64,000 bases of DNA, taken from IMG/VR virus record IMGVR_UViG_3300047499_000113, positions 62,001 through 126,000 of that record. One strand, 5' to 3'. The notes beneath the pieces are model-generated. The model saw only the letters and a list, made by a program, of their open reading frames with translations. It was not told the origin of the DNA and made no database searches. The position numbers were made by a program, and so were the translations under genes. Positions 11,426-40,448 of this stretch are shown in pieces. Within the stretch, counting starts at the first letter, position 1. Each line of letters opens with the position of its first letter.

Positions 11426-12463
11426 TCACTCGACGACGTTGGCTTCCGCTTCGTAGCGGTCCAGCTCCACAGTCAGGCCGCGCATGAGCTGCTTGCGCAT
11501 GTCTTCCAGCTCGCGATGCTTTTGTGCCAGCTCTTGGAGAAAGAGCTGGACGTAGCGGTCCTGTACCTTGGGGTGCCTGTGCTCGATCTTCTCGCGCGTC
11601 TTGAGTAGGACGTCAGCAGCCTTCTCGAGCGCCTTGTCGATGGGAGGTAGCTTTCCGCGCGTCTTCTCGACAAAATCGACAATCGCCTTGTCGTATTCTT
11701 TGTCGTCGCCGTCGCGCTCGAGCTTCTCTTTCACCTGAGTCGTGATGTCCTGCTGGGCTTGCAGCCAACGCGCTGCGATGCGCGACGCCACCGACTTGTG
11801 AATCTGTCCGTCGTAGACGCCTATCGACTTCAGTAACTTCTCGTCGATGTCATTGCCGTGCATCCATTCGACGTTGTCCCCGTCACCATCCATCCAAACC
11901 GAAACGTCGACTCCACCGAGCGCCCCATGAAGAGCGTCGAGTACCTGCAGTCCCGTCATGACGGATGACGAAGTCAGTTTGGCCAGATCCTCTACAACGT
12001 CCTCGGTGAAAGGCACCAGAACGTAGGCGTCTCGACCCACACGGATCAGGTATTTCTGCGGATCGAGAGGATCTGGCGAAGGGCTGAATTTGCCGGCAGC
12101 CTCGGCTTCCTCGGCTCGGAGCCATCGGCTCGCGATGCGCGACGCCAATGTCACGCGGGTGGTAACGAGCGAACTCATGCTGTCCGTCCGAGGGTAACGC
12201 GCCCCGTGTCCTTGGAGCCAGGCGTCAGCAATCTTCGAGGCGGTGGTAGGCTCGGCCGGAGTACCCGTGCTCTTCTGTGCCCACTGGGTTTTGTCAGGCA
12301 TCTCGAACACGGTGCACCTGTATCCCTGAATAGTCAGATAGCCTGAGAATTTCGCCTCCTTCACTACTTCGGGAGGGAGCTTCTCAGGCTTCCAGGAGCC
12401 ATCAGGCTGCAGGCGAAATGCCACTCCCGGTTGCAGTCTGGGTTCTGAAGTCCCTTCAACCAT
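11426..12463 (-). CDS. Hypothetical modular protein with three ASxIAxxWL motifs (possible internal virion protein)
   Basis: 345 aa; ASKIADAWL, ASRIASRWL and ASRIAARWL separate apparent modules. Confidence 0.7.
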   Translation of the reverse strand: MVEGTSEPRLQPGVAFRLQPDGSWKPEKLPPEVVKEAKFSGYLTIQGYRCTVFEMPDKTQWAQKSTGTPAEPTTASKIADAWLQGHGARYPRTDSMSSLVTTRVTLASRIASRWLRAEEAEAAGKFSPSPDPLDPQKYLIRVGRDAYVLVPFTEDVVEDLAKLTSSSVMTGLQVLDALHGALGGVDVSVWMDGDGDNVEWMHGNDIDEKLLKSIGVYDGQIHKSVASRIAARWLQAQQDITTQVKEKLERDGDDKEYDKAIVDFVEKTRGKLPPIDKALEKAADVLLKTREKIEHRHPKVQDRYVQLFLQELAQKHRELEDMRKQLMRGLTVELDRYEAEANVVE

Positions 12464-12896
12464 TAGAGACCTCTGAGGTCAGATGCTGCCCTCGCCCATA
12501 GCTCCGAATGCGATGACAGTTTGCGCAAACAATATCACACTTGACGACCTCTGCCAGGATCCGGTCTCTACCCCATCGCTTGACACGGGGATGGGATAGA
12601 TTGATGATTTTATCCCCTCTATGATCAAAATCCATCACATAATGAGGAAACTCATTCCTGCAATCCGCGCAGGGCTTAGACTTCAGACTGCGAATAAATT
12701 CCGCAACATCTAGCCGACGAGCCTCTGCCTGGGCAAAGTACACAACTTTGTTTGCTTCGTAGTGGGATCTGCCGCTTTTCTTTCGGCATTCCACACAACG
12801 AGCCGACAGTCCATCCCGCTCGGACCAGTCAAAATGCTCTCGGTCAGCCGGTTTCGGTAGACCGCACTTGGTGCAAGTCTTGGAACCGGCTTCCAT
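12456..12896 (-). CDS. HNH homing endonuclease with N-terminal Zn-finger
   Basis: CTKC...CVEC N-terminus; CADC...MDFDH...CDIVCANCHRIR; visibly lower GC than the flanks. Confidence 0.85.
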   Translation of the reverse strand: MEAGSKTCTKCGLPKPADREHFDWSERDGLSARCVECRKKSGRSHYEANKVVYFAQAEARRLDVAEFIRSLKSKPCADCRNEFPHYVMDFDHRGDKIINLSHPRVKRWGRDRILAEVVKCDIVCANCHRIRSYGRGQHLTSEVSNG

Positions 12897-12899
12897 AGA

Positions 12900-13448
12900 T
12901 CACTTGCCCGACTCGACGTTTGTTTTATCGGAATGATGGCCCTTGCCACGACGGTCAAAGTAGTACGTTTTGTTAGAAGACTGGTCGCCGTAAAGGCCGT
13001 GGACCGCCTTCTCGATCTGCTCGAGCGGCTTGTCGAGGTCCTCCACCGTATCGACGCACTCGAAGACGCCGGCGGTCTTCTGGACGATGGTGGCGATCTT
13101 CGGGCGGAGGGCAGCGAACTGCGGGCGCTTGGAGATCTCGATGGCGCGCTGCAACCCGGCGAGGATGGACACGATCCTCGTGTAGTTGCGAGCGGCCGGC
13201 TCCGCGGCGCTCTTGAGCTTCTTGACCTGCTCGCCGATGAAGGAGATGTCGTCCTTCAGGGAGTTGTCGCCGTAGCTGCCGAACTCGCCCTTGTTCTTGT
13301 AGCCGGTCGGCTTCTCGATCTGGCCGAGCCACTGGACTTGGGCTTGGAGTTCGTCGCAGACGCGCTGGACCGCTTCCGACTGCGGATCGGTCTCGGCCAG
13401 GCGCCGGGCGGTAGCTTGGATGTTTCGGAGGCCGGTCTCGAAGTCCAT
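12900..13448 (-). CDS. Hypothetical protein
   Basis: 182-aa helical ORF with GAGGAA RBS and host-like codon bias. Confidence 0.75.
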   Translation of the reverse strand: MDFETGLRNIQATARRLAETDPQSEAVQRVCDELQAQVQWLGQIEKPTGYKNKGEFGSYGDNSLKDDISFIGEQVKKLKSAAEPAARNYTRIVSILAGLQRAIEISKRPQFAALRPKIATIVQKTAGVFECVDTVEDLDKPLEQIEKAVHGLYGDQSSNKTYYFDRRGKGHHSDKTNVESGK

Positions 13449-13483: not shown

Positions 13484-13969
13484 ATGAAGTTGCCGTCGCG
13501 GGTCATGAAGTCGGTACAGTTCTTCATGACCATCAAGCACTGCCCGAAATGCGATAAAGACAAGTCTTTGGAAGACGATTTTTACAAGAATCGGTCCAAG
13601 AAGGACGGGCATCAGGCCATATGCAAAGAGTGCGTGGGGAAGAATACGAATCGATACTATGTTCGAAATAGGTCCCGGTTGAAATCACAGATTGAGGAGA
13701 GTAGGCTCAAGCGGGCAAAAGAGAACAAAGAATATGTCCTATCTTACCTGCGTGAGCATTCGTGCGTCGATTGTGGTGAAGGAGACCCCGTAGTGCTCGA
13801 ATTCGACCACATAGGCAAGAAAACACGCAACATTGCAGCTATGATCACCCGAGGCAACTCCATTGAAACAATTCAGGCGGAGATAGCCCAGTGCCAGGTA
13901 CGATGCGCTAATTGCCACCGGCGGAAAACAGCCAAGGACAAAGGCTACTTCCGGCTATCAGCCGCGTAA
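13484..13969 (+). CDS. HNH homing endonuclease
   Basis: CPKC...CKEC; CVDC...VLEFDH...CQVRCANCHRRKT; low GC. The true start may be ATG 13526 (MTIKHC). Confidence 0.87.
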   Translation: MKLPSRVMKSVQFFMTIKHCPKCDKDKSLEDDFYKNRSKKDGHQAICKECVGKNTNRYYVRNRSRLKSQIEESRLKRAKENKEYVLSYLREHSCVDCGEGDPVVLEFDHIGKKTRNIAAMITRGNSIETIQAEIAQCQVRCANCHRRKTAKDKGYFRLSAA

Positions 13970-15502
13970 AGCCTTCTTTAGCGGGATTATGTCAGCAGAT
14001 TCTTCGGCAGCGGCAACTGCGTGAACCTCTGCCTCAATCGTGTGATGACGCTTTGCGCGTTTCCCAATAGCATAATTGCGCATGACCTGCTCGGCCGCTG
14101 CATTCAGGTTGTCCGAGCTGAACTGGCAGGCGGTCCCATTCGGGCCACACTTGCCCTCGGCGACCGCACGGATGACCGTGGTCTTGGCGAGCAGGCGGAT
14201 GTACGCGCCAGTCAAGCCTTCCGTCATGTTGATGACGGTGGACCAGGTGTCCTGCGACACTGACGGATCCGGCGTGGCGTGGTACTCCGACAGGAAGCAC
14301 TTGAGCATGTTCGAACGATCCTCGGCGTCGGGCAGAGGAATCTCGAACTTTACGTCGAAACGACCGGGACGGTTGACGAGCGCCTCGTCCATTGAGGCGA
14401 TGTCGTTGGTCGAAGCCATCACGACTACCCCGGCGTTCTCTTGAGCGCCGTCGAGGCAAGCCAAGAACTCGTTGAGGACGTGCGTGTCCGAGCCGTACAG
14501 ACCGCTGCTGCGGTCGCGACCGAAGAGGTCCATGTCCTCGATGAAGACGATGCATGGTGCCAGCAGTCGTGCGGCCTGAAAGAGCGAGGTGACGTCGCTC
14601 GAGCGCTCGATGCTCTTGCCCGTGCACCAGATAATCGTCATCTTGCCGACGACTTCGCAGGACACGGCACGGAAGATCTTGGTCTTCGCCATACCGGGCG
14701 GCGAAATGAGGATGACGTTGGAGTTGGGGCACATGCCGAGCCCCTGGAGCTGCTCGGAGTGCTGCAGGACTTCCACCGTGCTCTGACGGATTCCGTCCTT
14801 GAGCAGCGGCTTGAGGATGATGCCAGACCATGGAGTCGGCGTCACTTCCATGAAGTCCAGGTGGCCGCGCACGTACGAGAGGCACTGGCGGTGATAAATA
14901 TCGTTCGCCAGGAGCGACGCGTTCATGTCGGCAATGAACTGCTCGGCCGCACCCTGCTGAGTAGGCGCTGCCATGACCGAAATCGAGCAGCCCATGCTCT
15001 CGAAGCAGAAGTCTGCGGTCACTACCAGGTGCGCGCCCGTACCGATGTGCTCGACAAAGAAGTTGCCGAACACGGGCAGCGTGACTTTGGTGTTCGGAGC
15101 GATGGTGATCTGCTCCGACTGGATTCGATATTGGTAGCTGCCCTTGAGCATGTCCTTGAATTCGTACTGATCCAAGAACGGAACGACCTTGTAAGTCGCC
15201 TGCTCGCCCGCGAATAGCCTCGAGAACGCCCACGCATTCAGGTCCCGGAAAACGGGCGGGAATGCCTGATTGAGCGTGACAACGGTGTGCAGCTCGCAGC
15301 CGAGCCACAGCTCCCGGATGTGTGCGTGAGGGTCTGCCGGTGCCCAACGAATTGGCCGCCTGGCGGCCATGGCACGCTGGTCGAGCTTGGCGAAATACGA
15401 GTCGAGGAGATAGTTGACCGCACCCGACACGGGCCCGGGAACCGCGTAGTCCACTTCCGCCAGCCTTCCAAGATATGCGGCAGCGGATCTGAGGGTGCCC
15501 AT
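13958..15502 (-). CDS. AAA+ ATPase (classical clade, FtsH/CDC48-like ATPase module) with unknown N-terminal domain
   Basis: Walker A variant ISPPGMAKT, Walker B IVFIEDMD, SRH ASTN...DEALVNRPGRFD with Arg finger; no TM segment or protease domain. Confidence 0.9.
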   Translation of the reverse strand: MGTLRSAAAYLGRLAEVDYAVPGPVSGAVNYLLDSYFAKLDQRAMAARRPIRWAPADPHAHIRELWLGCELHTVVTLNQAFPPVFRDLNAWAFSRLFAGEQATYKVVPFLDQYEFKDMLKGSYQYRIQSEQITIAPNTKVTLPVFGNFFVEHIGTGAHLVVTADFCFESMGCSISVMAAPTQQGAAEQFIADMNASLLANDIYHRQCLSYVRGHLDFMEVTPTPWSGIILKPLLKDGIRQSTVEVLQHSEQLQGLGMCPNSNVILISPPGMAKTKIFRAVSCEVVGKMTIIWCTGKSIERSSDVTSLFQAARLLAPCIVFIEDMDLFGRDRSSGLYGSDTHVLNEFLACLDGAQENAGVVVMASTNDIASMDEALVNRPGRFDVKFEIPLPDAEDRSNMLKCFLSEYHATPDPSVSQDTWSTVINMTEGLTGAYIRLLAKTTVIRAVAEGKCGPNGTACQFSSDNLNAAAEQVMRNYAIGKRAKRHHTIEAEVHAVAAAEESADIIPLKKALRG

Positions 15503-15578: not shown

Positions 15579-15896
15579 ATGGGCACATCATACGCGAAAG
15601 TGATCTCGAAGTTCTACCGGCTCCGGATGGCCGAACAGCTTCAGGACTTTCTCGACTCGTTGCCCGTGCGTGGCGTGCACGAATCGCACATGGGCGACAA
15701 CATCTACATGGCCAAGGGAGAACTGCGTGTAGGGCACACGTATTATCCAGTGGGCATACGGATCTGGCTCAAGGCCGGGCAAGTCGTTGCGCACATCGAG
15801 GCTCCGGATGTTCACCTGTCGGTCTTCGCCGAGCCGTTCGACCCGTTCAAAACGGCCGAGCTAGTGCGGCTCGCGGCAATGAAGGCTGCGTCCTAA
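15579..15896 (+). CDS. Hypothetical protein
   Basis: ATG 15579 after GAAAGG; 105 aa (MGTSYAKVISKFYRL...). Confidence 0.6.
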   Translation: MGTSYAKVISKFYRLRMAEQLQDFLDSLPVRGVHESHMGDNIYMAKGELRVGHTYYPVGIRIWLKAGQVVAHIEAPDVHLSVFAEPFDPFKTAELVRLAAMKAAS

Positions 15897-16150
15897 CTCT
15901 CCATCACGTGCGCAACCTGTACCTCTTCGCAGGAGTATCCTTCCGGAGAGTCTTCTTCGGAGTCTTCCTCGGGGACCAGGTCGCGGAGACGCCCGCTGTG
16001 GTCTAGGTCGTCGAGGAAGACCTTCTCCGCGGGGTCCAGTTGAAGCTTGCTTCCGAGCGCGGCGCCGCAGTTCCGACAGCCCCAAACGGGGAGTCCGCCA
16101 TCTGCAGGGCCCTCGGAGTAACCGCCGGACAAATACCAGTCGTGCATCAC
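15893..16150 (-). CDS. Small protein with CxxC and C-terminal VAHVMES
   Basis: 85 aa; HDW...CRNCG, acidic linker; GTGA-coupled to the upstream ORF. Confidence 0.6.
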   Translation of the reverse strand: MMHDWYLSGGYSEGPADGGLPVWGCRNCGAALGSKLQLDPAEKVFLDDLDHSGRLRDLVPEEDSEEDSPEGYSCEEVQVAHVMES

Positions 16151-16506
16151 GACTCCATTACGTGAGCAACTAGCTCGAGTTCGAAGATCTCCTTGATCTT
16201 CTCCTGCGAGAGGCCGCCACGTAGTGCCGCTCGAATGCCTTCGCGGAGCTGGACCTCCGGCCGTTCGAAGTTTTTCGGCGAAGAGGAGGCGTAGAAACTG
16301 TCAATTTTGACAGTCGGATTGGGCTCGACGAAGAAGTCGGGATTGCGGACGCGATCCTCCGCTGCCCAAGTACCCAAGTGCTCGTTCTTCCACTCCGGGC
16401 CAGTGGTAGGAATCTTCTTGGGCTCGGGCTTGATCGGAAACTCATGCCCACCGATTTTGACCTTCCCCTCGCGAGCTGCCTTACGAAGAATATCTCTATC
16501 GTCCAC
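16147..16506 (-). CDS. Small protein with C-terminal VAHVMES
   Basis: 119 aa; ends ELELVAHVMES. Confidence 0.65.
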   Translation of the reverse strand: MDDRDILRKAAREGKVKIGGHEFPIKPEPKKIPTTGPEWKNEHLGTWAAEDRVRNPDFFVEPNPTVKIDSFYASSSPKNFERPEVQLREGIRAALRGGLSQEKIKEIFELELVAHVMES

Positions 16507-18428: not shown

Positions 18429-18836
18429 ATGAATCTCCGTGAAGCCATCCGCACAATCGTTCAGGAAGTCGCCGGCGAGGAGATTCGTCGCATAGTGCGA
18501 GAGGTCCTCCTCGAAGAGCTGATGGCAGGAGAGAGCCCCAGGACCGTCGCGGCCAAGAAAGCGGCGGCCACCAGGCGAGCGAATCTGGCCAGCAGGTCCG
18601 CTCCGACCGCGAGTCCGACCAAGATCCCGCATCTGGCTCGCAAGCACGGCGTGTCAGTCGGCCAGAAGTACAAGGGCAAGCATTGGGACCCCAAGACGAA
18701 GGACAGGGTCATCGAGGTGGCCAGGCTCGAGGACAAGGGAATCGTGCCCAAGATCTTGCAGTCGTCCTCCAAGCGCACCGCGGCCAAGCGGATCTCGTAC
18801 GCCCGGCTCATGCACTCGTACGACCGGGTGGAGTAA
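18429..18836 (+). CDS. Small basic protein with N-terminal amphipathic (dimerisation-like) helix
   Basis: MNLREAIRTIVQEVAGEEIRRIVREVLLEEL, Lys/Ala/Arg-rich linker, possible SH3-like C-terminus; GAGGTG RBS. Confidence 0.7.
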   Translation: MNLREAIRTIVQEVAGEEIRRIVREVLLEELMAGESPRTVAAKKAAATRRANLASRSAPTASPTKIPHLARKHGVSVGQKYKGKHWDPKTKDRVIEVARLEDKGIVPKILQSSSKRTAAKRISYARLMHSYDRVE

Positions 18837-19726
18837 TGACACTCCGGGCTTTGCTCCGAGAGGTGGTGAGGGTCGAAATCCGGAACATCGCGCGCGATAC
18901 AGTTCGCGAGATGAAGCCAGTGGCGAGGCCCTCAGTCGAGACGCGCGACAGGACGCCGGCCTACAAGGGAGACTCTCACGCCAAGAAGTCCGCCCGACTC
19001 CGCGTGTGGGAGCTGGTCCTCAAGACCATCGGCACCAAGGCGTTTCGCAAGGGCCTGCACTTGTTCCTTGCCTCCCGCGAGGGCGGGGATGCGTCTACCC
19101 TCCGAGGACTTGGCGTGCCGGACCAAGCCATGCTGGCTGTGGACCTCGACGCCAAGGCGCTTTCGGAGTTCCGCCGGCATTATCCTGACGTGCCATGCCG
19201 CCATCAGGACGTGGGGGACGTCCTGGACGAGTATCACCGCAAGCTCGAGTCCGTGTGGCTCGACTTCTCGTCACAGGTGACCGAGAACACCCTCAAAAGG
19301 GTCGGGCGTGCTGTGCAGGCTATTCGCCCAGGAGGCGTGCTCGCCTGCACGTTCGCCATCGGTCGCGAGAAGTGGTGGTACGGCGCCAGGGAAGACGACA
19401 CGCCGGGCACCAGCGAAGACAGACTCAATGTGCTGCAGGGGTTCCTGGCCGACCAGCTGCCGTACAGCCCGCGAGTGCTCGCCAGATTCGAGTACCAGAG
19501 CGAATCGATACGCGGACCGGGCGCCCTCATGGCTGTCATGGTCGTGCAGATGCAGGCCGGCAGGGACGCCAAGAACTCCCGGCTACAGGCGCTCGACTAC
19601 CATGACTTGCAAAGGGACGCTTTGCGCTACGTCGGCGATCCGAATCTGTGCTGGCTGCTCAACCTCACCGAGGACAAGGCAGAGAAGCTCCGCGCTCGCG
19701 TTCGCGAATATCCGCCACCTCCGTAA
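18836..19726 (+). CDS. Class I SAM-dependent methyltransferase-like protein
   Basis: TAATG-coupled ATG at 18836; LAVDLD (acidic end of beta2), QDVGDVL, SVWLDF, IRPGGVL. Confidence 0.62.
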   Translation: MTLRALLREVVRVEIRNIARDTVREMKPVARPSVETRDRTPAYKGDSHAKKSARLRVWELVLKTIGTKAFRKGLHLFLASREGGDASTLRGLGVPDQAMLAVDLDAKALSEFRRHYPDVPCRHQDVGDVLDEYHRKLESVWLDFSSQVTENTLKRVGRAVQAIRPGGVLACTFAIGREKWWYGAREDDTPGTSEDRLNVLQGFLADQLPYSPRVLARFEYQSESIRGPGALMAVMVVQMQAGRDAKNSRLQALDYHDLQRDALRYVGDPNLCWLLNLTEDKAEKLRARVREYPPPP

Positions 19727-32097: not shown

Positions 32098-33353
32098 TGA
32101 ATAACACTACCAATTAGTAGCGTTATAAACGGACTCAAAACACGCTCGTAGGTCAGCTTCTTGCCAATCTTGACCGGCACCCCATTGATCCCAAGCTCGG
32201 TGGCCAACTGGAGCAAATCGTAGGAGGCTGCGCCCGAGAGGAAACCAAGGGTGTTGGCCTGCGATTCGGACGTGAGGTCCGTGCGGTTGATGACGATCGG
32301 CAACGGGACCCAGGTCTCCCAGTCCACGCGCAGCGAAAGGGTGACCGCGCTCTCGTAGTAGTAGTCGTCGATCTCGGCGTTGTAGACCTCTTCACTCTCG
32401 CCGCCGGGAGTGATGTCGAGAAGCTCAAGTCCCTCGAACCCGAGGACGTTCTGCCGCTCGAGGAACTTCTCGACCACGTAGTCACTCATGCGCTCTCTGT
32501 CGGTCGCATCACGAGCGAACACGATGAGGCTGAAAGTGACCTCGAACTTGCCACCGTAAACTTCGGCCACCTCGCCGCGAGTTCCGGTGACGACGATGGC
32601 CATTTGGTCGCCCTTCTGCACGCGGTCTCCGAACGCCAGAACAGCGCCGGGGATAGACTGAATATCCGTCCAATCGCGGTAGAAGTCGTAGGGACCCTGC
32701 TGAGGCAGCTGGTACCTGTAGTTGGCGAAAATGGAATCGCCGGCGGGAGTCGGCTGCAGGAACGTAACGACGGTGGTGTTATCCTCGGCCTCGTAGTTGA
32801 CCGAGTAGTCGACCCCAGGAACGAGGACGCGTCTGTTGTTGAGCGACAGACGCAGCGAGCCCGGATACACGTTCTCGTGAGAAAGCTGAGCGTATTGATC
32901 CGCCGAGTTCGTGAAGTAGATGAGCGGCTCGTTTAGGACCGTGATGATCGGGTCTACGATGAACTTTCCCGGCTTCTGGCGAGCGTCGTCTGGAAGCTCC
33001 TGCACCGTGACGATGTAGACGCCAGGCGGAGTCGGGAAGACACTTCTGTCCGGGTTGACTTCCTCGAGAATGGTGAAATTCTCGCGGGTCCACTCGAGTG
33101 AAGTGCCCGGGAAGTTCTTGACTGGCGCGAGCATCACGAATGACGACAGACGGCCGACGTAGTTGTCCGCGCTCAGGCGAACACGGTCAGCCGTCGTGTT
33201 ATCAACGATAATGCCGCGCTGGGGCCGCTGCTCAAACGAGAACTTGTTCTGGACGTTCTCGGAGTCCTCTCGATACCTCGGGTGATCGTAGAGGATCTGC
33301 TTGAGTTCGTGGATGACCCGCTCTTTCGTGGCGTTGGTGAGCCAATTCTTCAC
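31971..33353 (-). CDS. Probable tail terminator / tail completion protein
   Basis: 460 aa between neck genes and sheath; C-terminal FEVTFSLIVFARDATDRERMSDYV...YYESAVTLSLRVDWE resembles terminator-type folds. The last ~55 aa overlap the endonuclease and look non-homologous. Confidence 0.55.
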   Translation of the reverse strand: MKNWLTNATKERVIHELKQILYDHPRYREDSENVQNKFSFEQRPQRGIIVDNTTADRVRLSADNYVGRLSSFVMLAPVKNFPGTSLEWTRENFTILEEVNPDRSVFPTPPGVYIVTVQELPDDARQKPGKFIVDPIITVLNEPLIYFTNSADQYAQLSHENVYPGSLRLSLNNRRVLVPGVDYSVNYEAEDNTTVVTFLQPTPAGDSIFANYRYQLPQQGPYDFYRDWTDIQSIPGAVLAFGDRVQKGDQMAIVVTGTRGEVAEVYGGKFEVTFSLIVFARDATDRERMSDYVVEKFLERQNVLGFEGLELLDITPGGESEEVYNAEIDDYYYESAVTLSLRVDWETWVPLPIVINRTDLTSESQANTLGFLSGAASYDLLQLATELGINGVPVKIGKKLTYERVLSPFITLLIGSVIQWHHQNPSGQFTVIHILTLVVVTLVSLLGQWRSDGKTMSRLP

Positions 33354-33377
33354 AGCGGGCCTCCACCCGAGCCCAGG

Positions 33378-33629
33378 TCAGACTCCTTTGAACGGATCCG
33401 GTTCCGTTGCAGGCTCGGGAGCCGGGAGAGTCGTGCGCTCGGAATCGTCGACTTCGACCTTTGCCTTCTTCGCTTTGGACTTCGGCGTAGCGGCCGGGGT
33501 GGGAGGGGGAGGAGGTGCAGCGCCCTTGTCCGCCTTCTGGGCCTTGTGCAGGTCCGGATAGCAGAATTCGATGACGTCGGCTTCGGTCAACAACGTCCGC
33601 GGGAACATCGCGCCTTTGATGTGTGCCAT
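33378..33629 (-). CDS. Small hypothetical protein, Pro/Lys-rich
   Basis: 83 aa, AGGAGAG RBS. Confidence 0.65.
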   Translation of the reverse strand: MAHIKGAMFPRTLLTEADVIEFCYPDLHKAQKADKGAAPPPPPTPAATPKSKAKKAKVEVDDSERTTLPAPEPATEPDPFKGV

Positions 33630-33653
33630 GCGCTCTCCTATGCCATAAAGGTC

Positions 33654-34661
33654 TCAGTCGTCCATCTGAGACAGCATCAGGAGACCAGTCGCGACGGCCG
33701 TCATCGGGTCGATCGCGCCACGCACCTCCGAGATCTGGATGGGGAACTTGGCGCGATGAAGCTCGAAGCGCTCCTTGAACTTGTCGAGGAAGCCGCCGGC
33801 GAGCGAGGTCCCGCCCGACACGATGATGGGGATGGGCTTCGGGACGAGAAGCTCGTTCTTGGCCTTCGCGAAGCGCTTGCTGAACTCGTCGATGGTGTAA
33901 TCGATGAGTGTCTGGACGAAGAGCGCGATGGCCTCTTCCTCGCGCGTCTTGGGCTTGGTGATGTCGATGCCGCCTTCCTTGACGGCGCACATCTTGGCCG
34001 CCGTCGAGTTGACAGCTTTGGCCGCACCACCATCGATCCAGTCACCACCCTTGCCGAGAGAAAACTCGAGGGCGCTCATGGCGTTGTACGCCAGACACAC
34101 GTTTGTCATGCCCGAGCCATACGAGATGCCGAGTCCGGAGAAGCTCTCCTTCGTGCAATCCGCATAGATGATGGCGAGCGCTTCGTTGACGGGCTCTGCC
34201 TGATACCCGAGTTCGCCCAGGATCTTGCCGAGGATTGCCCGGTGGTAGGTCACGTCCGACCCCACGACGTCGACCGCCGGCGCCGGGATGGAGTAGCAGC
34301 ACTTCTCCTTGGGCATGCGAGGCTCGCCCAAGATCTGCTTCATCATCAGACCGATGACCTGCTGCGCGTCGATTTCGCCCGAGGCGATCACGCCCTGGGA
34401 CATGGGACGACGAGCCTCCCTGTTGAACAGGTTGGCCGTCTCGAGGGCTTTGTCACCGATGACTAGGAGCTTGCCGTCGACCTCCACGTAGTCGGTGTTG
34501 GAGATCTTGAGCATCCGCTTGGTGTCGAGCGGAAGGTCCAAGAAGGCGTCGCGGACCCGGGAGTGCACGATCTTCTTGGCACTGCGCCGCGCGGCCACGA
34601 AATTCATCGTGCCGCAGTCGAGTCCTACCCCCGCGTCTTCAGGCTTCTTGGTGTCGGTCAT
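33654..34661 (-). CDS. Actin-family ATPase (volactin/MamK-like group)
   Basis: Phosphate-1 GLDCGTMN, connect-1 EPVNEALA, phosphate-2 GISYGSGMTNVC, adenosine VSGGTS, connect-2 DPMTAVATG; start taken as ATG 34661. Confidence 0.9.
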   Translation of the reverse strand: MTDTKKPEDAGVGLDCGTMNFVAARRSAKKIVHSRVRDAFLDLPLDTKRMLKISNTDYVEVDGKLLVIGDKALETANLFNREARRPMSQGVIASGEIDAQQVIGLMMKQILGEPRMPKEKCCYSIPAPAVDVVGSDVTYHRAILGKILGELGYQAEPVNEALAIIYADCTKESFSGLGISYGSGMTNVCLAYNAMSALEFSLGKGGDWIDGGAAKAVNSTAAKMCAVKEGGIDITKPKTREEEAIALFVQTLIDYTIDEFSKRFAKAKNELLVPKPIPIIVSGGTSLAGGFLDKFKERFELHRAKFPIQISEVRGAIDPMTAVATGLLMLSQMDD

Positions 34662-34694
34662 GGGTCTGCGTCTCCGTATCCAGGACAATACAGC

Positions 34695-35048
34695 TCAGTA
34701 CCACCTGGGCAGTATATCTTTGGATTCCGGAACAGGAGCAGAATCCTGTCGTTCACGCAAGTCGTCGAAGGTAGCCAGGAGCTGCTCGAGGACGACTATC
34801 TCCGCGCGCAGCCGCTTGTTCACGAACTCGTCGAAGTGAGCCAGTGCCTCCGGGTGGTTCAGAAGGTCGACACCACCGCGGCCGGAGTATAGGTCACCCT
34901 TCGCATACTGCTCGAGACGGCCCAGGGCGGTCAGCACCAGGGCCGCCACCCGCTGAGCAAGAGCGTCCCCACTATCCACCAGGTCCTGCCTGCCGCACTC
35001 CAGCAGGAAGTCCCTTGCTTCGTTGGACCAGAAGGATTGGCGGGGCAT
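34695..35048 (-). CDS. Hypothetical protein
   Basis: 117 aa, TAATG-coupled to the upstream gene. Confidence 0.65.
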   Translation of the reverse strand: MPRQSFWSNEARDFLLECGRQDLVDSGDALAQRVAALVLTALGRLEQYAKGDLYSGRGGVDLLNHPEALAHFDEFVNKRLRAEIVVLEQLLATFDDLRERQDSAPVPESKDILPRWY

Positions 35049-35596
35049 TACTTCTTGCGCGCTTTCTTGAGGGCCTCGAGTCCGGCGTCGAAGTCTTCCG
35101 TGTCAGCTTCCGAGGTTTGGACGTTGAGTTTGACCTCGGCGGATTCTGGCACTATCTGCTTCGGTATGAACATCGGCTCATCAGAAGGCTTGCTGACTGC
35201 CTGCGCGGCTTGACCGGGAAGAGCAGAGGCCGTCTGATAGATGACTTGCGGGGTAGGCGCCCGTTGAAGAGCGGCAGCCATACTATCGAGTTTCGCCATG
35301 ATGCTTTGGAGCATGGCGGATTCCACGGGCGGCGCCGGCGGAGGAATTGTGGGGTGCGAGGGAGCAGCCGAGAAAGGCCACACTGGGATGGGCGGTTTCG
35401 GCGGAACTGGGGCGGGAGCGCGCTGCTCTATGGTTATCCACTTCTTGCGTTCGTACTCTCGAACCTGGCGCGACGACATGAAGGTCTGCTCGGGCAAGAG
35501 CTTCGAGCTGGATGCACCGCCAGCACCATCGAGCCGCACACCAATGTCCTCGATGGTCAGGCTCGAAGGCAATCGGTTCGTCACCAAGTACATCAT
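35048..35596 (-). CDS. Hypothetical protein (structural region), Pro-rich linker
   Basis: 182 aa, in-operon overlaps at both ends. Confidence 0.7.
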   Translation of the reverse strand: MMYLVTNRLPSSLTIEDIGVRLDGAGGASSSKLLPEQTFMSSRQVREYERKKWITIEQRAPAPVPPKPPIPVWPFSAAPSHPTIPPPAPPVESAMLQSIMAKLDSMAAALQRAPTPQVIYQTASALPGQAAQAVSKPSDEPMFIPKQIVPESAEVKLNVQTSEADTEDFDAGLEALKKARKK

Positions 35597-36291
35597 GTGG
35601 ATATGTAGTTCTTGAGAATCTTCTCTATCTGCGGTGCGAACTTCTCCAACACTACTTGCCGCAGCTCATCCATGAACCTCTTCATGATGCCCTGGAACTT
35701 GCCCTGCGGAAAGTGGATGTCGCCCGATTTGGCCACCCGAGTCTGGCGTTCGAAAGTGACCGAGAGCCGACCCTCTCGGTTGATGTTCATGTCGCGCGGC
35801 GCGCTCATGGCGAGCCTATGGTTCATCTTGCGCTCTTCAGGACCTTTGAACGCGTTGCGCGGTCCATATTTGCTACTGTTGGGACCCCACTGGCGCAAGT
35901 TGGACCGGGTCCGATTGGGCCTGTTGAGCGCACTTGGAACAGGCCGCCTCTTATCCTTCATCCGCGCGACGCGGTTGAAGCCTCCGCGGGCGATAACCTG
36001 GTAGGTCCTGTCGGCCGCTTCTTCGTACGCTTCGGCGGCTCGAGCTGCCGATTCCTCGAGCTTCTTGACGTCGATGTCGACCGCCTCGAGCTGAAGAAGG
36101 ATTTCGAACACGATGCCCTCGGCGCCAACGTGCGAGAACACCTCGTAGTCCTTGAGCATCGGCTTTTGCGGGAAGCCAGCCTCGTCGAGCACTTTCTTCA
36201 GTGCCATCAGGCCGTCTTTGGCAATCTCGTCCTTGACTGCCTCAGTGGCCCTCTCGAGTTGTGCCACCAGGCTGGTCGCGATGCTGGCCAC
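35593..36291 (-). CDS. Hypothetical protein (possible neck/tail-completion protein)
   Basis: 232 aa with basic central region; position among head-tail joining genes. Confidence 0.65.
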   Translation of the reverse strand: MASIATSLVAQLERATEAVKDEIAKDGLMALKKVLDEAGFPQKPMLKDYEVFSHVGAEGIVFEILLQLEAVDIDVKKLEESAARAAEAYEEAADRTYQVIARGGFNRVARMKDKRRPVPSALNRPNRTRSNLRQWGPNSSKYGPRNAFKGPEERKMNHRLAMSAPRDMNINREGRLSVTFERQTRVAKSGDIHFPQGKFQGIMKRFMDELRQVVLEKFAPQIEKILKNYIST

Positions 36292-36293
36292 GA

Positions 36294-37625
36294 TTACCTA
36301 CGGTTCGTGTTCTCTGCAGTCGGCGAGTTACCGCGATACTGACGCTCGGCCGGAATGGTCTCGCGGTCAGTGAGCATCGGGAATGCTTTACCCTTGCCCG
36401 GAACGATGTACCGAGTCTGCGGTGCGACGAGGAGTTCCGTCTGAATGACGGGAACTTTGTACCGAATATCGGCTGTGTCGAGGTGCGACGTCGTGAAGAA
36501 CTGCTGGAGCTGCATGCCACGAATGCTCGGCATGCGCACCGGGCCGATTCCGTACCTGTCGCCGTTGAGCTTCACGAAGAAATCGCGCTGGGTCAGCAGC
36601 GGGCTCGGACCAGTCCACGTGTCGTACGGGTGCTGGACCGTGCGACCTCGATTGCCCTGCGAAATGGAGCGTTCCCCATCTTCCGGAGCGATGAGGATGT
36701 CGTACGGACCGTCGTATCCTCCGATGATGCTCGTGCCGTAGCACGTGAGGCAGGAAGCGTCGGGCTGCTTGCGAGAATAGTCGTAGCAGCCGCACTTCGG
36801 GCCGACCAGCTTCATCTTGAAGAGTTTGACCGGCTCGCCACCGTTGCCCAGCATCCAGCGGTTACGGCGGATGGCTTCACGCCAAATCCAGTCCAGGCTC
36901 TCTATCTGACGATTGTTGGCCTCGGCCGCGCGGTCCAGCGAGGTCTCGATGAGCGCGCCGGTGTTCCTGTCGACGGCGACCGTCGTGATCCGGTAATAAG
37001 TCTTCTGGTCCAGCTCCGAGGGGACCTCACGCTCGAGGTAGTAGCGGTACGTCGCCAGGACGAGGTCAGTCGGATTCTGAGGCAGGACGGGCGGAGACTG
37101 CACCTGCGAAGCCACGTCGAAGGTCACGGTCCGGCGAAGCTCGACCTCTCCCATCTTGGCGTTGATGCTCTCGACGAACGCCGGGATGCCGTTGACTGTG
37201 ACGTAGACGTTGAGGTTCGTACAATTCGGGCTGTGAGCCGACGTCGTGTCGAGGATTATCGGCTTGTTCTCCGTTTGGAAGATCCAGCGGCCATCCGGGT
37301 CCGTGTCACCGCGCGCGATGAAGCGCTGGGTGACATTCTCGTTCATGGCGACCCGGATGAGGAGTCGGTCGCGATAGAAGTCCCCGCCAATGGGCAAGGC
37401 ATTGAGCCGGACGTAGGGCCCATACTCGGAGTCGAAGCTCCGGTAGACGTTGACGCCCACGATGTCGAACTGCGTGTTGGCTGGAATCTCTGTCGGACTC
37501 GTCCACCTCAAGTCCGTGACATGCAGTTCGAACCCGCTTGAACACATGATGTTCAGCGGTGGCAGAGGCAGCGCCGGATACTGAAGCTCGAGCGTGCCTA
37601 TTGGGCGATCGGGCGGGAAGGGCAT
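36294..37625 (-). CDS. Head closure / neck (stopper-like) protein with Cys cluster
   Basis: GGEPVKLF...GPKCGC...QPDASCLTCYGTSIIGGY resembles the CxC...CxxCxG motif of Herelleviridae-type neck proteins; N-terminal beta-rich domain. Confidence 0.65.
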   Translation of the reverse strand: MPFPPDRPIGTLELQYPALPLPPLNIMCSSGFELHVTDLRWTSPTEIPANTQFDIVGVNVYRSFDSEYGPYVRLNALPIGGDFYRDRLLIRVAMNENVTQRFIARGDTDPDGRWIFQTENKPIILDTTSAHSPNCTNLNVYVTVNGIPAFVESINAKMGEVELRRTVTFDVASQVQSPPVLPQNPTDLVLATYRYYLEREVPSELDQKTYYRITTVAVDRNTGALIETSLDRAAEANNRQIESLDWIWREAIRRNRWMLGNGGEPVKLFKMKLVGPKCGCYDYSRKQPDASCLTCYGTSIIGGYDGPYDILIAPEDGERSISQGNRGRTVQHPYDTWTGPSPLLTQRDFFVKLNGDRYGIGPVRMPSIRGMQLQQFFTTSHLDTADIRYKVPVIQTELLVAPQTRYIVPGKGKAFPMLTDRETIPAERQYRGNSPTAENTNRR

Positions 37626-37646
37626 GTCCCTTCCTTCGATACCCGA

Positions 37647-38012
37647 TTAGGAGGTTGGCGACTCGCCAGCCGGGGGCGCAGGAGCAGCTTGCGGGACGGG
37701 CGGCGGAGGGGCTCCGTTCGCCGGCGGAGCCATCGGGTTGGGCACGCAGACGATGTCCACCAGGCCCTCCTTGGTCTCCTTGTTCATGCTAATGCGGATG
37801 TCCTGGATGGTGTTCTCGTCGACACCCGCTTCCTTGTACGCCTTGCTCAGGAGCTGATTGCGGGCCGTTGTGATGGCCTCGAACTGTGCCATGGCTTGCT
37901 TGTGCTGCATTTCCAGGTTGCAAGCCTGGATGGCCCAATGCTGGGCGGACGACTCGAGCTTGGCGAGACTCTGAAGCTCTTCGGCCGAGAGCTTCGCTTG
38001 GCGGTGGATCAT
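37647..38012 (-). CDS. Hypothetical coiled-coil protein with Pro-rich tail
   Basis: Probable start ATG 38012 (MIHRQAKLSAEEL). Confidence 0.6.
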   Translation of the reverse strand: MIHRQAKLSAEELQSLAKLESSAQHWAIQACNLEMQHKQAMAQFEAITTARNQLLSKAYKEAGVDENTIQDIRISMNKETKEGLVDIVCVPNPMAPPANGAPPPPVPQAAPAPPAGESPTS

Positions 38013-38031
38013 GCCGCACAGTACCGAGCGA

Positions 38032-38343
38032 CTATTCTTCCTGTTCGCCCTGCTCGTCTTCGCCGAAGTCACCCTGGTCGTTGATGGCTACCTCGAGCTT
38101 CAGAGGCTTGACAAGCACGCGGCCCGGTTCCAAGCGCAGTTCCCGGGATACCACCTTGATGGCCGCCTCGAGCGCGCTCATGACCTCGGACTCGAGCTTT
38201 TTGACCAGAACATCCTTGGCGACCTGTCCCTCGAACTCTGCGCTGAAGGCTATCTCCGTCCGGACGCTGTACTCGGTCGCCGGGTGCTCCAGGCTCTCGT
38301 GGGTAGAGGCCGCAACGCGAGCAGCGATGGACTCGAGTCTCAT
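38032..38343 (-). CDS. Hypothetical protein with N-terminal SIAARVAA motif
   Basis: Probable start ATG 38343 (MRLESIAARVAAST); the longer track ORF is an upstream extension through the divergent gene. Confidence 0.65.
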   Translation of the reverse strand: MRLESIAARVAASTHESLEHPATEYSVRTEIAFSAEFEGQVAKDVLVKKLESEVMSALEAAIKVVSRELRLEPGRVLVKPLKLEVAINDQGDFGEDEQGEQEE

Positions 38344-38390
38344 ATTCTGGGCACGCATGAAAATTCTGGAGGCTTGGTTGTAACCTGGGT

Positions 38391-38957
38391 GTGGGTCGGG
38401 CCCGGTTTCCTCATCCCTGCGTCTGCAAGGTCTGCGACAAGGAAGTTCCATACAAGGAACGCAAACGCTGTCACAAGTGCGGCGATTGGGTCCACAACTT
38501 TTGCGGCAACGTGGACAGCCGTCATCCCGAAAAGCGGACTCTTTGCTTCGGCTGCCTGCCTCCATGTTCGAACATGGAACTCATCGATGCGCAGATGCAG
38601 GATCTCGACACCAATTGGGAGCCCGAGGCGTACAAGTCCGGGGCTATCTTCCTTGCGTCGCTGCACTGCGGGCCAGACGAGCAGAAAATCGCCGAGCTGA
38701 CTGGCTACCTGCCGGACGAAGTCCGACTCCGAGGCGACAGACTTCGAGCGAACAAGCTCTGGTTCGACGACAAGGTTGCCATTCCAGGACCAGTCCCGGA
38801 AGGTGACGGTCGAGCCGCGAGCATCGCGCTTCTCATGGCCGTCCTGTGCGCGGACGGGATGATTCAGCGCTCAGATACCGAGGAAGCGGCGGGGAGTAAG
38901 GGCGCCGCGGCCGACGCTGGGACCAAACGAGCTGCGGATGCCGACACCGAAGCGTGA
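38391..38957 (+). CDS. PHD-finger-like (C4HC3) + HTH-like protein
   Basis: CKVC-x11-CHKC-GDWV-H-NF-C-x13-CFGC, then EQKIAELTGYLPDEVRLRGDRLRANKLW. GTG start with weak RBS; 3' end overlaps the adaptor gene by 87 nt. Confidence 0.62.
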   Translation: MGRARFPHPCVCKVCDKEVPYKERKRCHKCGDWVHNFCGNVDSRHPEKRTLCFGCLPPCSNMELIDAQMQDLDTNWEPEAYKSGAIFLASLHCGPDEQKIAELTGYLPDEVRLRGDRLRANKLWFDDKVAIPGPVPEGDGRAASIALLMAVLCADGMIQRSDTEEAAGSKGAAADAGTKRAADADTEA

Positions 38958-39770
38958 CTGACGCAAACCGCGAATGATCTTCACGGTCTCCTTCGCGGCT
39001 GTCACGAAGTCGGTGAAACGCTGCTGGGCGTCGTTGGCCATGCCCTGGTACTTGGCGCTCTTCTCCAAGTCGAGCGACACACCGCCGATGGTGTATCCGA
39101 ACTCGTCGAGGATCCAGTTCAAGGACACGGCGTTGACCGCGTGCACCATAGCGCCTGTGAAGAGCAGAGTGCGCCAGTCGCGGTGCTCCGAGATGAGCTG
39201 GTCGAGCGTCTGGTAGAACGTCTGCGGCGGGTACATGTTGATGGAGTCGTTGGACATCCGCAGGAACTCGAGCAGTTCCGCGTCCTCCCAAATGTAGCCG
39301 AACACACGCGTGAACTCGTTGACCGATTCTTCGCCCGCCGGCGGCACGAAGTGGTAGTTGCGCGCCGGGTTGTTGTCGCGGAGCATGATGCGCATGCCGC
39401 GAATGAGGTCGTACTCGATGGGCGTGATCCCAGGAAGGGTCACGACCTGCGTCGCGTTATCGACGATCGAGAACTCCTGGACCGTCTGGACTTGAGGCGA
39501 GTTGACGAACTGCCTGAAGTACCAGCGAATGCGATAGTTGCCGATATTGGCGTCGAGCGGGATGACGAAACAAGCGAAGTATTCACCCGTTGCCGGATTG
39601 CGCGGATGACGATTCGCTGGCGGGAGGATGACCTCGAGTCCCGTCGTGAAATCGTAGACGCTGTAGGTGATCTCGGCCGCGTTGGTGGGCGAGCCGTCCT
39701 TCGACTTCAGGAAGATGTTGAGGCCATTCGCGCGCCCCAACTCCTGACCCCGCCGGAATGTGGTCGCCAT
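38871..39770 (-). CDS. Head-tail adaptor/neck protein with N-terminal Ig-like domain
   Basis: GEYFACFVIP...GNYRIRWYF (Ig-like), then LIRGMRIMLRDNNP...WEDAELLEFL...GGVSLDLEKSAKY (adaptor-like helical domain). Confidence 0.65.
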   Translation of the reverse strand: MATTFRRGQELGRANGLNIFLKSKDGSPTNAAEITYSVYDFTTGLEVILPPANRHPRNPATGEYFACFVIPLDANIGNYRIRWYFRQFVNSPQVQTVQEFSIVDNATQVVTLPGITPIEYDLIRGMRIMLRDNNPARNYHFVPPAGEESVNEFTRVFGYIWEDAELLEFLRMSNDSINMYPPQTFYQTLDQLISEHRDWRTLLFTGAMVHAVNAVSLNWILDEFGYTIGGVSLDLEKSAKYQGMANDAQQRFTDFVTAAKETVKIIRGLRQSRFGVGIRSSFGPSVGRGALTPRRFLGI

Positions 39771-39779
39771 GAAGGCACC

Positions 39780-40448
39780 TTACTCTTTGACGTGCGGCGT
39801 ATGGCCTTCGTTGTATTGGTTCCAGCTGAGTGCCTCGGCCCGCTCCTTCGAGAAGCCGTGGTCCTTGACCATCTTCTCGACGACGCCACCCCAGCCCGGA
39901 GGAGACTTGGCCGTCTCCTGCTGCTGACCCTGGTGTTCGCCCTCGTTCAGATGGACCTCGGGAATGGGCTCGTCGCCCTCCGCGTCCTCGAGGGTCATCT
40001 TCCAGTCAGCTTGCTGCTGACCCTGCTGCTCTTGCTGCCCAGTGGTCTCCATCGCAGCGATGATGGACTGCAGGTCGGACAGTACGACCTCGAGCTGAGG
40101 TTTCGTCGAGTTGGCAAGACGCGCGGCGACGAGCCGGATGTCGTGTGCGATGTCGTTGGGCGTAACTGCGCCCTTCTTCATGTGCTTGAACTTCTCGACC
40201 TGCTTGAGGCGCTCCTCGGCCTTGCCGTGCGAGGGATAGCAACCACCACTCCAGTCCGGGTTTTTCTCGGACTTGACGCAGTAGCCCTTGCCCTTCTCGT
40301 GCTTGATGTAGCCAACCTGCTCCTGCTGGCCCTGCTGTTCCTGCTGCGAAACAACCGCGGGCGGAGCATCCGCGGGCAGACCTTCAGATTGCTGCTGAGC
40401 GCAGACGGAACGCGATGCTACCCGGGCGGCCAGAGAGAGCAGACTCAT
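39780..40448 (-). CDS. Modular Gln-rich hypothetical protein with N-terminal SLAARVAS motif
   Basis: Probable start ATG 40448 (MSLLSLAARVASRS); modules GYCVKSEK...GCYPSHGKAEERLKQVEKFKH and SPPGWGGVVEKM...AEALSWNQYN joined by QQEQQGQQ repeats. Confidence 0.7.
   Translation of the reverse strand: MSLLSLAARVASRSVCAQQQSEGLPADAPPAVVSQQEQQGQQEQVGYIKHEKGKGYCVKSEKNPDWSGGCYPSHGKAEERLKQVEKFKHMKKGAVTPNDIAHDIRLVAARLANSTKPQLEVVLSDLQSIIAAMETTGQQEQQGQQQADWKMTLEDAEGDEPIPEVHLNEGEHQGQQQETAKSPPGWGGVVEKMVKDHGFSKERAEALSWNQYNEGHTPHVKE

What the first reader, a model, noticed from the sequence alone, without database searches (positions are those of the whole stretch)
11426..40448. Recurring (S/A)x(R/K)(I/V)A(A/S)R peptide motif across unrelated proteins: possible capsid-targeting or maturation-cleavage signal
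Seen: three copies in 11426..12463 (ASKIADAWL ~12216-12240, ASRIASRWL ~12118-12146, ASRIAARWL ~11762-11790; two share the DNA 16-mer GCGATGCGCGACGCCA on the plus strand). It also starts 39780..40448 (MSLLSLAARVASRS, with internal RLVAARLA) and 38032..38343 (MRLESIAARVAAST), with a weaker copy in 34695..35048 (LAQRVAALVL). Established: T4 internal proteins carry a short N-terminal capsid-targeting sequence removed by the prohead protease. Inference: an analogous signal. In 11426..12463 the motif punctuates separate modules, as in a polyprotein.
Basis: partly seen in the sequence, partly recalled or inferred. Interest (0 to 1): 0.66.

Follow-up and report, generated by a model that had tools for sequence, protein, structure and literature searches.

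The report
Shared address tag in huge phage
A 240-kb uncultivated phage and its relatives put the same 12-residue peptide (consensus M-x-L-x-R-IAARVAA) on the ends of at least ten otherwise unrelated proteins; it most likely addresses them to the assembling capsid, as the T4 capsid-targeting sequence does, but no experiment has tested this.

Summary
The window is part of a 240,015-bp huge-phage genome. The core [ILV]A[AS][RK][VI]A occurs 13 times in 226 proteins, against 0.19 in shuffles and 0 for the reversed pattern. Nine of the ten strongest copies lie within 20 residues of the N-terminus (7) or 15 of the C-terminus (2).

The codons differ freely at third positions, so the protein is conserved, not the DNA. 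The carriers share nothing else and are mostly small orphans. Several are scaffold-like proteins of the head module.

Six related genomes carry the same tag, usually exactly five codons after ATG. One has six consecutive tagged genes, plus a seventh with an internal copy, starting 410 bp downstream of the capsid gene. A sister lineage with a more diverged capsid protein uses a different tag, NPRKAFExAL.

In 11426..12463 the copies bound variable modules between two conserved domains. The copy in 34695..35048 is not supported.

Best reading: a lineage-specific capsid-addressing peptide like the T4 CTS (confidence about 0.45). Cleavage at the tag is untested. One complex prediction, capsid protein with tag, gave no answer.

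The parts
11426..12463 (-). Gene for P0001 (345 aa). It has a conserved N-terminal beta domain (about residues 10-65) and a conserved C-terminal helical hairpin (about 250-341), with three tag copies and a variable middle between them.
   Evidence: There are 33 homologues. S227, A230 and L234 are invariant and W233 nearly so. The model gives pLDDT around 90 for the two end domains and below 50-65 for the tag regions.
12215..12241 (-). Tag copy 1 of P0001 (ASKIADAWL, residues 75-83), directly after the N-terminal domain.
   Evidence: The copy is kept in nearly all homologues as TAS(K/R)IA..W/F-L.
12119..12145 (-). Tag copy 2 of P0001 (ASRIASRWL, residues 107-115). The core LASRIA matches the unified tag regex.
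   Evidence: It contains one of the two copies of the shared 16-mer.
11762..11788 (-). Tag copy 3 of P0001 (ASRIAARWL, residues 226-234), directly before the conserved C-terminal domain. This is the best conserved copy in the family.
39780..40448 (-). Gene for a 222-aa tagged protein, immediately upstream of the conserved 299-aa neck protein gene.
   Evidence: Orthologues in relatives keep the N-terminal tag (L013, L014, G010). No Pfam or PHROG family matches.
40410..40448 (-). N-terminal tag of the 222-aa protein (residues 1-13, MSLLSLAARVASR).
   Evidence: HMM score 17.1 bits.
38032..38343 (-). Gene for a 103-aa tagged acidic protein (pI 4.8 computed on the 108-aa call), immediately downstream of the 299-aa neck protein gene.
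   Evidence: The start at 38343 puts the ATG five codons before the core, which is the rule across the clade.
38305..38343 (-). N-terminal tag of the 103-aa protein (MRLESIAARVAAS).
   Evidence: This is the highest HMM score in the genome, 25.9 bits.
38871..39770 (-). Context: a 299-aa conserved neck or head-completion protein flanked by the two tagged genes.
   Evidence: It is homologous to Tunturi_5 gp319, annotated 'head-tail connector', and to phage G gp165. It has 83 relatives in IMG/VR.

Best explanation
The motif is a short helical address tag. Its consensus is M-[DNR]-[LFI]-x-[RK]-I-A-[AS]-R-[VI]-A-[ASG]. It usually forms the first 12 residues of a protein, and sometimes the last 10-15 residues or an internal linker. 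It is attached to at least ten otherwise unrelated proteins of this huge phage.

Inferred mechanism: the tag docks its carrier onto a conserved component of the assembling prohead, which could be the scaffolding core, the inner face of the very conserved HK97-fold capsid protein, or the protease. The carriers are thereby enclosed in the capsid, and some are probably ejected with the DNA. This parallels the T4 capsid-targeting sequence of the internal proteins and Alt.

Scaffold-like head proteins carry the same tag, so cargo and scaffold would use one docking mode. The candidate protease ends in a conserved related tail, KGRIASV..F. Whether the tag is later cut off is open. In the P0001 family the internal copies probably mark joints where tagged modules were fused.

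Shown: the tag exists, is enriched, lies at protein ends, is selected at the protein level, is conserved across the clade, differs between lineages and is associated with the head module. Inferred: binding to the prohead, packaging and cleavage.
For: - **Enrichment and position.** The core gives 13 hits against 0.19 expected, and the reversed pattern gives 0. Nine of the ten strongest copies lie in terminal windows that hold 10.7% of residues.
- **Protein-level selection.** Pairwise identity among copies is 0.85 at codon positions 1 and 2 and 0.24 at position 3.
- **Unrelated carriers.** With the tag masked, no pair of carriers scores better than E = 0.2. Of 34 tagged proteins, only two have a Pfam family.
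- **Abrupt end of conservation.** Nothing is conserved after the tag, as expected for a tethered docking peptide.
- **Conservation across the clade.** The DNA pattern gives 5, 5, 10, 10, 3 and 7 hits in six related genomes and 0 for the backwards control. Most of these hits are N-terminal, with the ATG at -5. Orthologues of the 222-aa and 364-aa proteins keep the tag at the same end.
- **Link to the head module.** Copies lie in the 887-aa Q/E/K-rich protein next to the portal gene, in an 86-aa protein next to the large terminase gene, and as weaker, below-threshold resemblances in the 488-aa Q-rich scaffold-like protein and in neighbouring genes. In G006, seven genes starting 410 bp after the capsid gene carry the tag, six of them at the N-terminus.
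- **Co-variation with the head.** Tag-bearing genomes have a capsid protein 85-98% identical to ours. Genomes with 75-76% identity lack the tag, and G011 uses NPRKAFExAL instead.
- **Precedent.** The T4 CTS is a 10-20-residue N-terminal propeptide (PMC5694885).
Against: - No virion proteome exists for any tag-bearing phage, so packaging is not shown for a single carrier.
- The cultured relative Tunturi_5 and phage G lack the tag.
- The receptor is unknown.
- The protease assignment is weak (PHROG E = 4.5e-4; no Pfam or PDB match for its exteins).
- Several tagged genes lie far from the head genes. One (205 aa) lies among putative tail or baseplate genes.
- Co-variation of the tag with the capsid clade would also arise with any other lineage-specific partner.
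- C-terminal and internal copies have no T4 precedent.
Confidence: 0.45

Rival explanations
1. The tag is mainly a recognition and cleavage signal for the prohead protease. P0001 would be a polyprotein cut at each copy, and N-terminal leaders would be removed from the other carriers.
For: In the P0001 family the copies sit exactly at module boundaries. In G011, internal copies of that lineage's own tag keep a preceding Met. In T4 the targeting sequence ends in the gp21 cleavage site, so one peptide serves both roles. A candidate protease lies in the head module.
Against: No residue is conserved at a fixed distance after the tag. Two copies are 3-10 residues from the C-terminus, and most are within 12 residues of the N-terminus, so cleavage alone would achieve little. 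The capsid protein itself has no copy. The protease type and specificity are unknown.
Confidence: 0.15
2. The tag anchors small proteins on the outside of the virion. This could be as decoration or cement proteins on the capsid lattice, or as a docking peptide on a branched tail or neck structure, like the conserved N-terminal docking peptides of secondary receptor-binding proteins in Klebsiella phages.
For: A 296-aa capsid protein without insertion domains, building a capsid for 240 kb or more, would plausibly need accessory proteins. Two tagged genes flank the neck protein gene and one lies among putative tail genes. There is precedent for shared docking peptides on otherwise unrelated virion proteins (PMC13352976).
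Against: The carriers are 64-364 aa orphans, not receptor-binding proteins. The tag also occurs in Q/E/K-rich scaffold-like proteins, one of which has a lysine-rich tail, and these look like internal proteins. Arrays of hypervariable small acidic proteins resemble the T4 internal-protein locus more than decoration proteins.
Confidence: 0.15
3. The tag is a docking motif or degron for a partner outside the virion. It would act as a terminal recognition tag for an AAA+ unfoldase or protease, either the phage's own (window 13958-15502, in the same gene cluster as P0001) or the host's. Alternatively it addresses proteins to another intracellular structure.
For: Degrons also work at either terminus. 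The AAA ATPase, a 182-aa gene, a 146-aa gene and the P0001 gene keep their order in a relative.
Against: There is no link between the AAA gene and the other tagged genes. The head-module enrichment and the array next to the capsid gene remain unexplained. Internal copies behind folded domains argue against a motif that needs a free end.
Confidence: 0.12
4. There is no common function. The copies are a chance low-complexity Ala/Arg-rich helix in a GC-rich genome, a DNA-level repeat, or a signal of the translation-start region.
For: The genome has 60% GC, which favours Ala and Arg codons. Two P0001 copies share a 16-mer.
Against: Composition-preserving shuffles give 0.19 hits against 13 observed, and the reversed pattern gives 0. 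Third codon positions are randomised. Lower-GC relatives with different codons keep the peptide. C-terminal and internal copies rule out a start-region element.
Confidence: 0.02

Closest known systems
T4 capsid-targeting sequence (CTS) of internal proteins IPI-III and Alt (Mullaney and Black 1996, as summarised in PMC5694885)
   Same: Both are short (10-20 residue) N-terminal peptides shared by otherwise unrelated, often small, proteins. In G006 the tagged genes form a tandem array next to the head genes. Sequence conservation stops right after the tag.
   Different: The sequence is unrelated, and no Glu-terminated cleavage site is conserved. The tag also occurs at C-termini, internally, and in scaffold-like proteins. 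Packaging and removal are unproven here. The capsid protein is a small HK97-type protein, not gp23-like.
Shared capsid-binding tails of protease and scaffold (established knowledge, from memory: the HK97 gp4 C-terminal tail; the herpesvirus protease and scaffold with a common C-terminus; the P22 and 80alpha scaffold C-terminal helices)
   Same: One terminal peptide would bring several different proteins into the procapsid. The candidate protease here ends in a conserved tail, KGRIASV..F, that resembles the tag.
   Different: In those systems two or three proteins share the tail, usually through nested genes. Here ten or more independent genes carry it, mostly at the N-terminus.
Encapsulin cargo-loading peptides and microcompartment encapsulation peptides
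   Same: These are short terminal peptides at either end of unrelated cargo, followed by a flexible linker. In encapsulins they dock on the inside of an HK97-fold shell. The capsid protein here is HK97-fold, with encapsulins among its structural matches.
   Different: This is a DNA-packaging phage with portal and terminase, not a cellular compartment. There is no sequence similarity to known loading peptides, and binding is untested.
Conserved N-terminal docking peptides of branched receptor-binding proteins in Klebsiella phages (PMC13352976)
   Same: A conserved N-terminal peptide on otherwise unrelated virion proteins serves as a plug-in connector.
   Different: Those carriers are large tailspikes. 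The carriers here are small orphans and scaffold-like proteins.

Membership tests
T4-type capsid-targeting sequence (CTS) | A short N-terminal peptide shared by several otherwise unrelated proteins of one phage | tested here: met
   There are seven N-terminal copies in this genome. The carriers show no similarity beyond the tag. Six related genomes carry 25 further tagged ORFs.
T4-type capsid-targeting sequence (CTS) | The carriers are found inside the prohead or virion | not testable with these tools
   No proteome exists for any tag-bearing phage. Tunturi_5 and phage G lack the tag.
T4-type capsid-targeting sequence (CTS) | The tag ends in a prohead-protease site and is removed on maturation | tested here: inconclusive
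   No residue is conserved after the tag. An [SAG]-x-E site occurs within 12 residues in only some copies. The protease family is unresolved.
T4-type capsid-targeting sequence (CTS) | The tag alone is sufficient to package a foreign protein | not testable with these tools
   This needs a fusion experiment.
T4-type capsid-targeting sequence (CTS) | Sequence homology to the T4 CTS, or a T4-like head (gp23, gp22, gp21) | tested here: not met
   The capsid protein is a 296-aa HK97-type protein. No gp21 or gp22 family was found. The tag is therefore an analogue, not a member.
Encapsulin cargo-loading peptide | The peptide binds the inner face of an HK97-fold shell protein | tested here: inconclusive
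   The one complex prediction returned 'no answer', which counts neither for nor against.
Encapsulin cargo-loading peptide | The shell has no portal, terminase or tail | tested here: not met
   Portal and large terminase are present. A sheath-like protein and a neck protein are present.
Polyprotein with repeated cleavage sites (P0001) | Independent modules are separated by a repeated site | tested here: met
   In alignment A1, variable inserted modules are bounded by tag copies.
Polyprotein with repeated cleavage sites (P0001) | Cleavage occurs at the repeated site | not testable with these tools
   This needs protein-level data.

The most novel reading that the evidence does not exclude
Huge phages of this group would run a programmable, lineage-specific protein-sorting code. 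Interchangeable 10-12-residue tags (IAARVAA in one lineage, NPRKAFExAL in a sister lineage, and possibly the C-terminal ...VMES tag as a second channel) would route dozens of fast-evolving orphan proteins to distinct destinations. The P0001 family would serve as a multi-tag hub, or as a fusion product of tagged modules. If so, the packaged or ejected proteome of uncultivated huge phages could be read directly from sequence, and the tag and its receptor would form a new natural cargo-loading system for large HK97 capsids.
Probability: 0.2. Interest if true: 0.8.

Novelty: new variant of a known kind. Interest (0 to 1): 0.62.

Why it matters
Most genes of huge phages are orphans. A sequence-readable tag marking a functional class, probably capsid-packaged and perhaps ejected proteins, would annotate ten or more orphans per genome at once. 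It would also point to the phage's early-acting arsenal.

The sister lineage has swapped to a different tag while keeping the same arrangement. That suggests a general tag-and-receptor system that co-evolves with the head.

If binding is confirmed, the tag is a natural 12-residue handle for loading foreign cargo into very large HK97-type capsids.

Tried and rejected
- **Complex prediction.** Capsid protein (alignment A3) with the first 45 residues of a tagged protein (alignment A2) returned 'no answer', score 0.00. This is not evidence either way.
- **Fold of P0001.** The search found only generic helical hairpins for the C-terminal domain. The N-terminal domain was not searched on its own.
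- **Carrier annotation.** Pfam, PHROGs and the ESM Atlas gave no function for the carriers.
- **Phage collection.** Megablast of window 30000-42000 found nothing. tblastn with two head proteins added little.
- **Protease.** Its exteins have no Pfam or PDB sequence match.
- **G001 C-terminal copy.** I first suspected that the C-terminally tagged 511-aa ORF of G001 was the protease orthologue. BLAST showed it is the orthologue of our 364-aa protein instead.
The copy in 34695..35048 and the internal copy in 39780..40448 were rejected as noise.
- **Neck-region loci.** In the loci of more distant relatives the IAARVA-type HMM is barely above the reversed control (4-6 hits against 2-3). The tag is therefore limited to a subclade.
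- **DNA repeat or start-region element.** Rejected by codon analysis.
- **Sec or Tat signal, clamp-binding motif.** Considered from memory and set aside. The tag has no hydrophobic core and no twin arginine, and the carriers are not replication proteins.
- **Literature.** Searches found no description of this tag.
Full report
**What the window is.** The window is bases 62001-126000 of a single 240,015-bp virus record with 59.8% GC. My own gene call gives 225 genes covering 92% of the record. The large terminase, portal, a candidate prohead protease interrupted by an intein, Q-rich scaffold-like proteins and a 296-aa capsid protein all lie outside the window, at genome 156-173 kb. The capsid protein model is confident (pLDDT 92) and matches HK97 gp5 (Foldseek E = 4.5e-12), with encapsulins further down the list. 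The nearest named relatives are distant: Tunturiibacter phage Tunturi_5, an uncultured 485-kb phage, and phage G. IMG/VR holds more than 80 huge-phage contigs with the 299-aa neck protein encoded in the window, and 45 with the head module.

**Checking the observation.** Looser searches of the whole genome brought up many more copies outside the window. A 15-column HMM built from nine copies then recovered a tenth in an uncalled 64-aa ORF on the other strand.

In called proteins the ten copies score 15.8-25.9 bits. Reversed and shuffled proteomes give nothing at or above 8 bits. The unified core [ILV]A[AS][RK][VI]A gives 13 hits against 0.19 expected (maximum 3 in 500 shuffles), and the reversed pattern gives 0. 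These 13 include two of the three P0001 copies.

Seven of the ten strong copies start within the first 9 residues. Two end within 10 residues of the C-terminus. One lies at residue 69 of an 887-aa protein. The terminal windows hold 10.7% of all residues.

**Protein or DNA.** Across the 13 copies, pairwise identity is 0.85 at codon positions 1 and 2 and 0.24 at position 3. All four Ala codons and five Arg codons are used. Selection therefore acts on the peptide. C-terminal and internal copies exclude a signal of the translation-start region.

**The carriers.** With the tag masked, no two carriers are similar (best E = 0.2). None has a Pfam or PHROG family. Most are 64-222 aa and several are acidic.

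The head module carries further copies:
- The 887-aa Q/E/K-rich protein just downstream of the portal gene has the tag at residue 69. It also has two longer helix-Pro-helix variants, and a lysine-rich tail.
- An 86-aa protein next to the large terminase gene ends in the tag.
- The 324-aa protein ends in the long variant.
- The 488-aa Q-rich scaffold-like protein and the N-termini of the 182-aa and 450-aa proteins show degenerate forms. These score below the HMM threshold and are resemblances only.

The candidate protease ends in F-L-x-W-K-G-R-I-A-S-V-x-F in nearly every relative.

**Relatives.** A degenerate DNA pattern for I-A-[AS]-R-[VI]-A gives 5, 5, 10, 10, 3 and 7 hits in six related genomes of 184-427 kb. 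The backwards control gives 0. Nearly all hits are terminal, and in 21 of 32 N-terminal copies the ATG lies exactly five codons before the Ile. The consensus is M-[DNR]-[LFI]-x-[RK]-I-A-[AS]-R-[VI]-A-[ASG], and no position after it is conserved.

Orthologues keep the tag at the same end: the 222-aa protein in L013, L014 and G010, and the 364-aa protein in G001. In G006 the gene order is protease, scaffold, a 232-aa gene and the capsid gene. A run of seven genes begins 410 bp after the capsid gene. Six of them start with the tag and one carries it after a 65-residue domain, and they are otherwise dissimilar. Of 34 tagged proteins, one is a NIF-type phosphatase and one carries DUF5661; the rest are orphans.

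**Lineage specificity.** The capsid protein is 85-98% identical in all 43 head-module loci of other contigs where it was matched. The protease (32-68%) and the scaffold (38-69%) diverge much further. Tunturi_5, phage G and G011 have no copy of the tag, and G012 and G013 have one or two. Their capsid proteins are 49% (Tunturi_5), 75-76% (G011-G013) and 65% (G005) identical to ours.

G011 instead carries M-(x)-N-P-R-K-A-F-E-x-A-L at the start of at least nine ORFs. That pattern gives 13 hits against 0 for the control, and none in G006 or G007. Its protease tail reads KGRLFSL rather than KGRIASV. The tag type therefore tracks the head lineage. Any other lineage-specific partner would give the same picture.

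**P0001 (11426..12463).** This protein has 33 homologues. The alignment shows a conserved 70-residue N-terminal domain and a conserved 110-residue C-terminal domain. Between them lie modules that differ from one homologue to the next, each bounded by a tag copy of the form [TLV]AS[RK][IV]A..[WYF][LI].

The AlphaFold model is confident for the two end domains. It predicts the tag regions as helices with low confidence, not packed against anything. The fold search returned only generic helical hairpins. The gene keeps its neighbours in a relative: an AAA ATPase gene, a 182-aa gene and a 146-aa gene.

Tandem arrays of N-terminally tagged genes, and internal tags in G011 that keep a preceding Met, suggest that internal copies arise by fusion of tagged genes. 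Cleavage at these sites is possible but untested.

**Interpretation.** The best-supported reading is a capsid-addressing tag, analogous to but not homologous with the T4 CTS (PMC5694885). It also parallels the shared capsid-binding tails of protease and scaffold in other HK97-fold viruses (from memory). The basis is:
- the terminal position of the tag, followed by an unconserved region;
- unrelated orphan carriers;
- copies in scaffold-like proteins;
- the array next to the capsid gene;
- the related protease tail;
- co-variation of tag type with the head lineage.

Packaging, the receptor and removal of the tag are all inferred. Rivals are a pure cleavage signal, an external decoration or docking peptide (compare the docking peptides of Klebsiella phage receptor-binding proteins, PMC13352976), and a degron or docking motif for the neighbouring AAA ATPase. 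The chance or DNA-repeat explanation is refuted. Literature searches found no description of this tag.

**Limits.** The gene calls are my own, and N-terminal positions depend on the chosen start codons; the ATG-at-minus-5 regularity supports them. The HMM statistics are partly circular, because nine of the ten hits seeded the model; the regex counts are not affected by this. 

Noticed in passing
window 15893-16147 (-) and 16147-16506 (-); 12 more genes elsewhere in the genome: There is a second terminal tag. 14 of 226 proteins end in ...[VI]-x-x-[VI]-(M/H)-(E/D/A/C/T)-S, mostly VMES or IMES at the very C-terminus. In the relatives' loci, 16 ORFs end in [VI][MH]ES, against 0 for three permuted patterns.
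   Followed up: partly
G011 (record behind L018), e.g. L193-L199: A sister lineage has no IAARVA tag. Instead it carries M(x)NPRKAFExAL at the start of at least nine ORFs, several of them clustered near its neck gene, and some stop-to-stop frames hold two copies, each preceded by Met.
   Followed up: partly
genome 156191-157081 (outside the window; L005:10191-11081): The 296-aa HK97-fold capsid protein is 85-98% identical across the 43 matched head-module loci of other contigs, while the neighbouring protease and scaffold are only 32-69% identical. This is unusually strong constraint on a capsid protein.
   Followed up: partly
genome 159526-162330 (L005:13526-16330) and 199219-203304: The candidate prohead protease (934 aa) carries an intein with a LAGLIDADG endonuclease. 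The 1361-aa protein has an insertion of about 400 aa relative to its 954-aa orthologue in G001, which may be another intein.
   Followed up: no
genome 163139-164113 (C-terminus) and 165476-168139 (about residue 800); L059 N-terminus: A longer helix-Pro-helix variant, [LIV][IV]R[LY]AH..P..R..LLP[IV][IL], occurs at the C-terminus of the 324-aa head protein (conserved in most of its orthologues), inside the 887-aa protein, and at the N-terminus of an ORF in a distant relative. Its first helix aligns with the tag.
   Followed up: partly
window 33654-34661 (-): An actin-like protein of the Volactin family (PF25216, E = 2.4e-73) is encoded between the neck and tail genes.
   Followed up: no
window 24830-30649 (-): A 1939-aa protein starts like a tail sheath. 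Tunturi_5 has a long sheath gene in the corresponding place.
   Followed up: no
window 18429-18836 (+) and 18836-19726 (+): Two adjacent genes start with a similar Arg/Glu/Val-rich helical N-terminus (M-x-L-R-...-E-I-R-x-I-x-R), unlike the tag studied here.
   Followed up: no
window 12456-12896 (-) and 12900-13448 (-): A 146-aa ORF that my gene caller missed is conserved in synteny between the 182-aa gene and the P0001 gene. The 182-aa protein starts with a degenerate tag-like helix followed by Pro; it scores below threshold.
   Followed up: no
genome 136650-138059 (L004:10650-12059): A 469-aa protein with a SWIM zinc finger (at the Pfam threshold) and a Q/E-rich C-terminus carries a core copy (LASRIA) at residue 69, the same position as in the 887-aa protein.
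   Followed up: no
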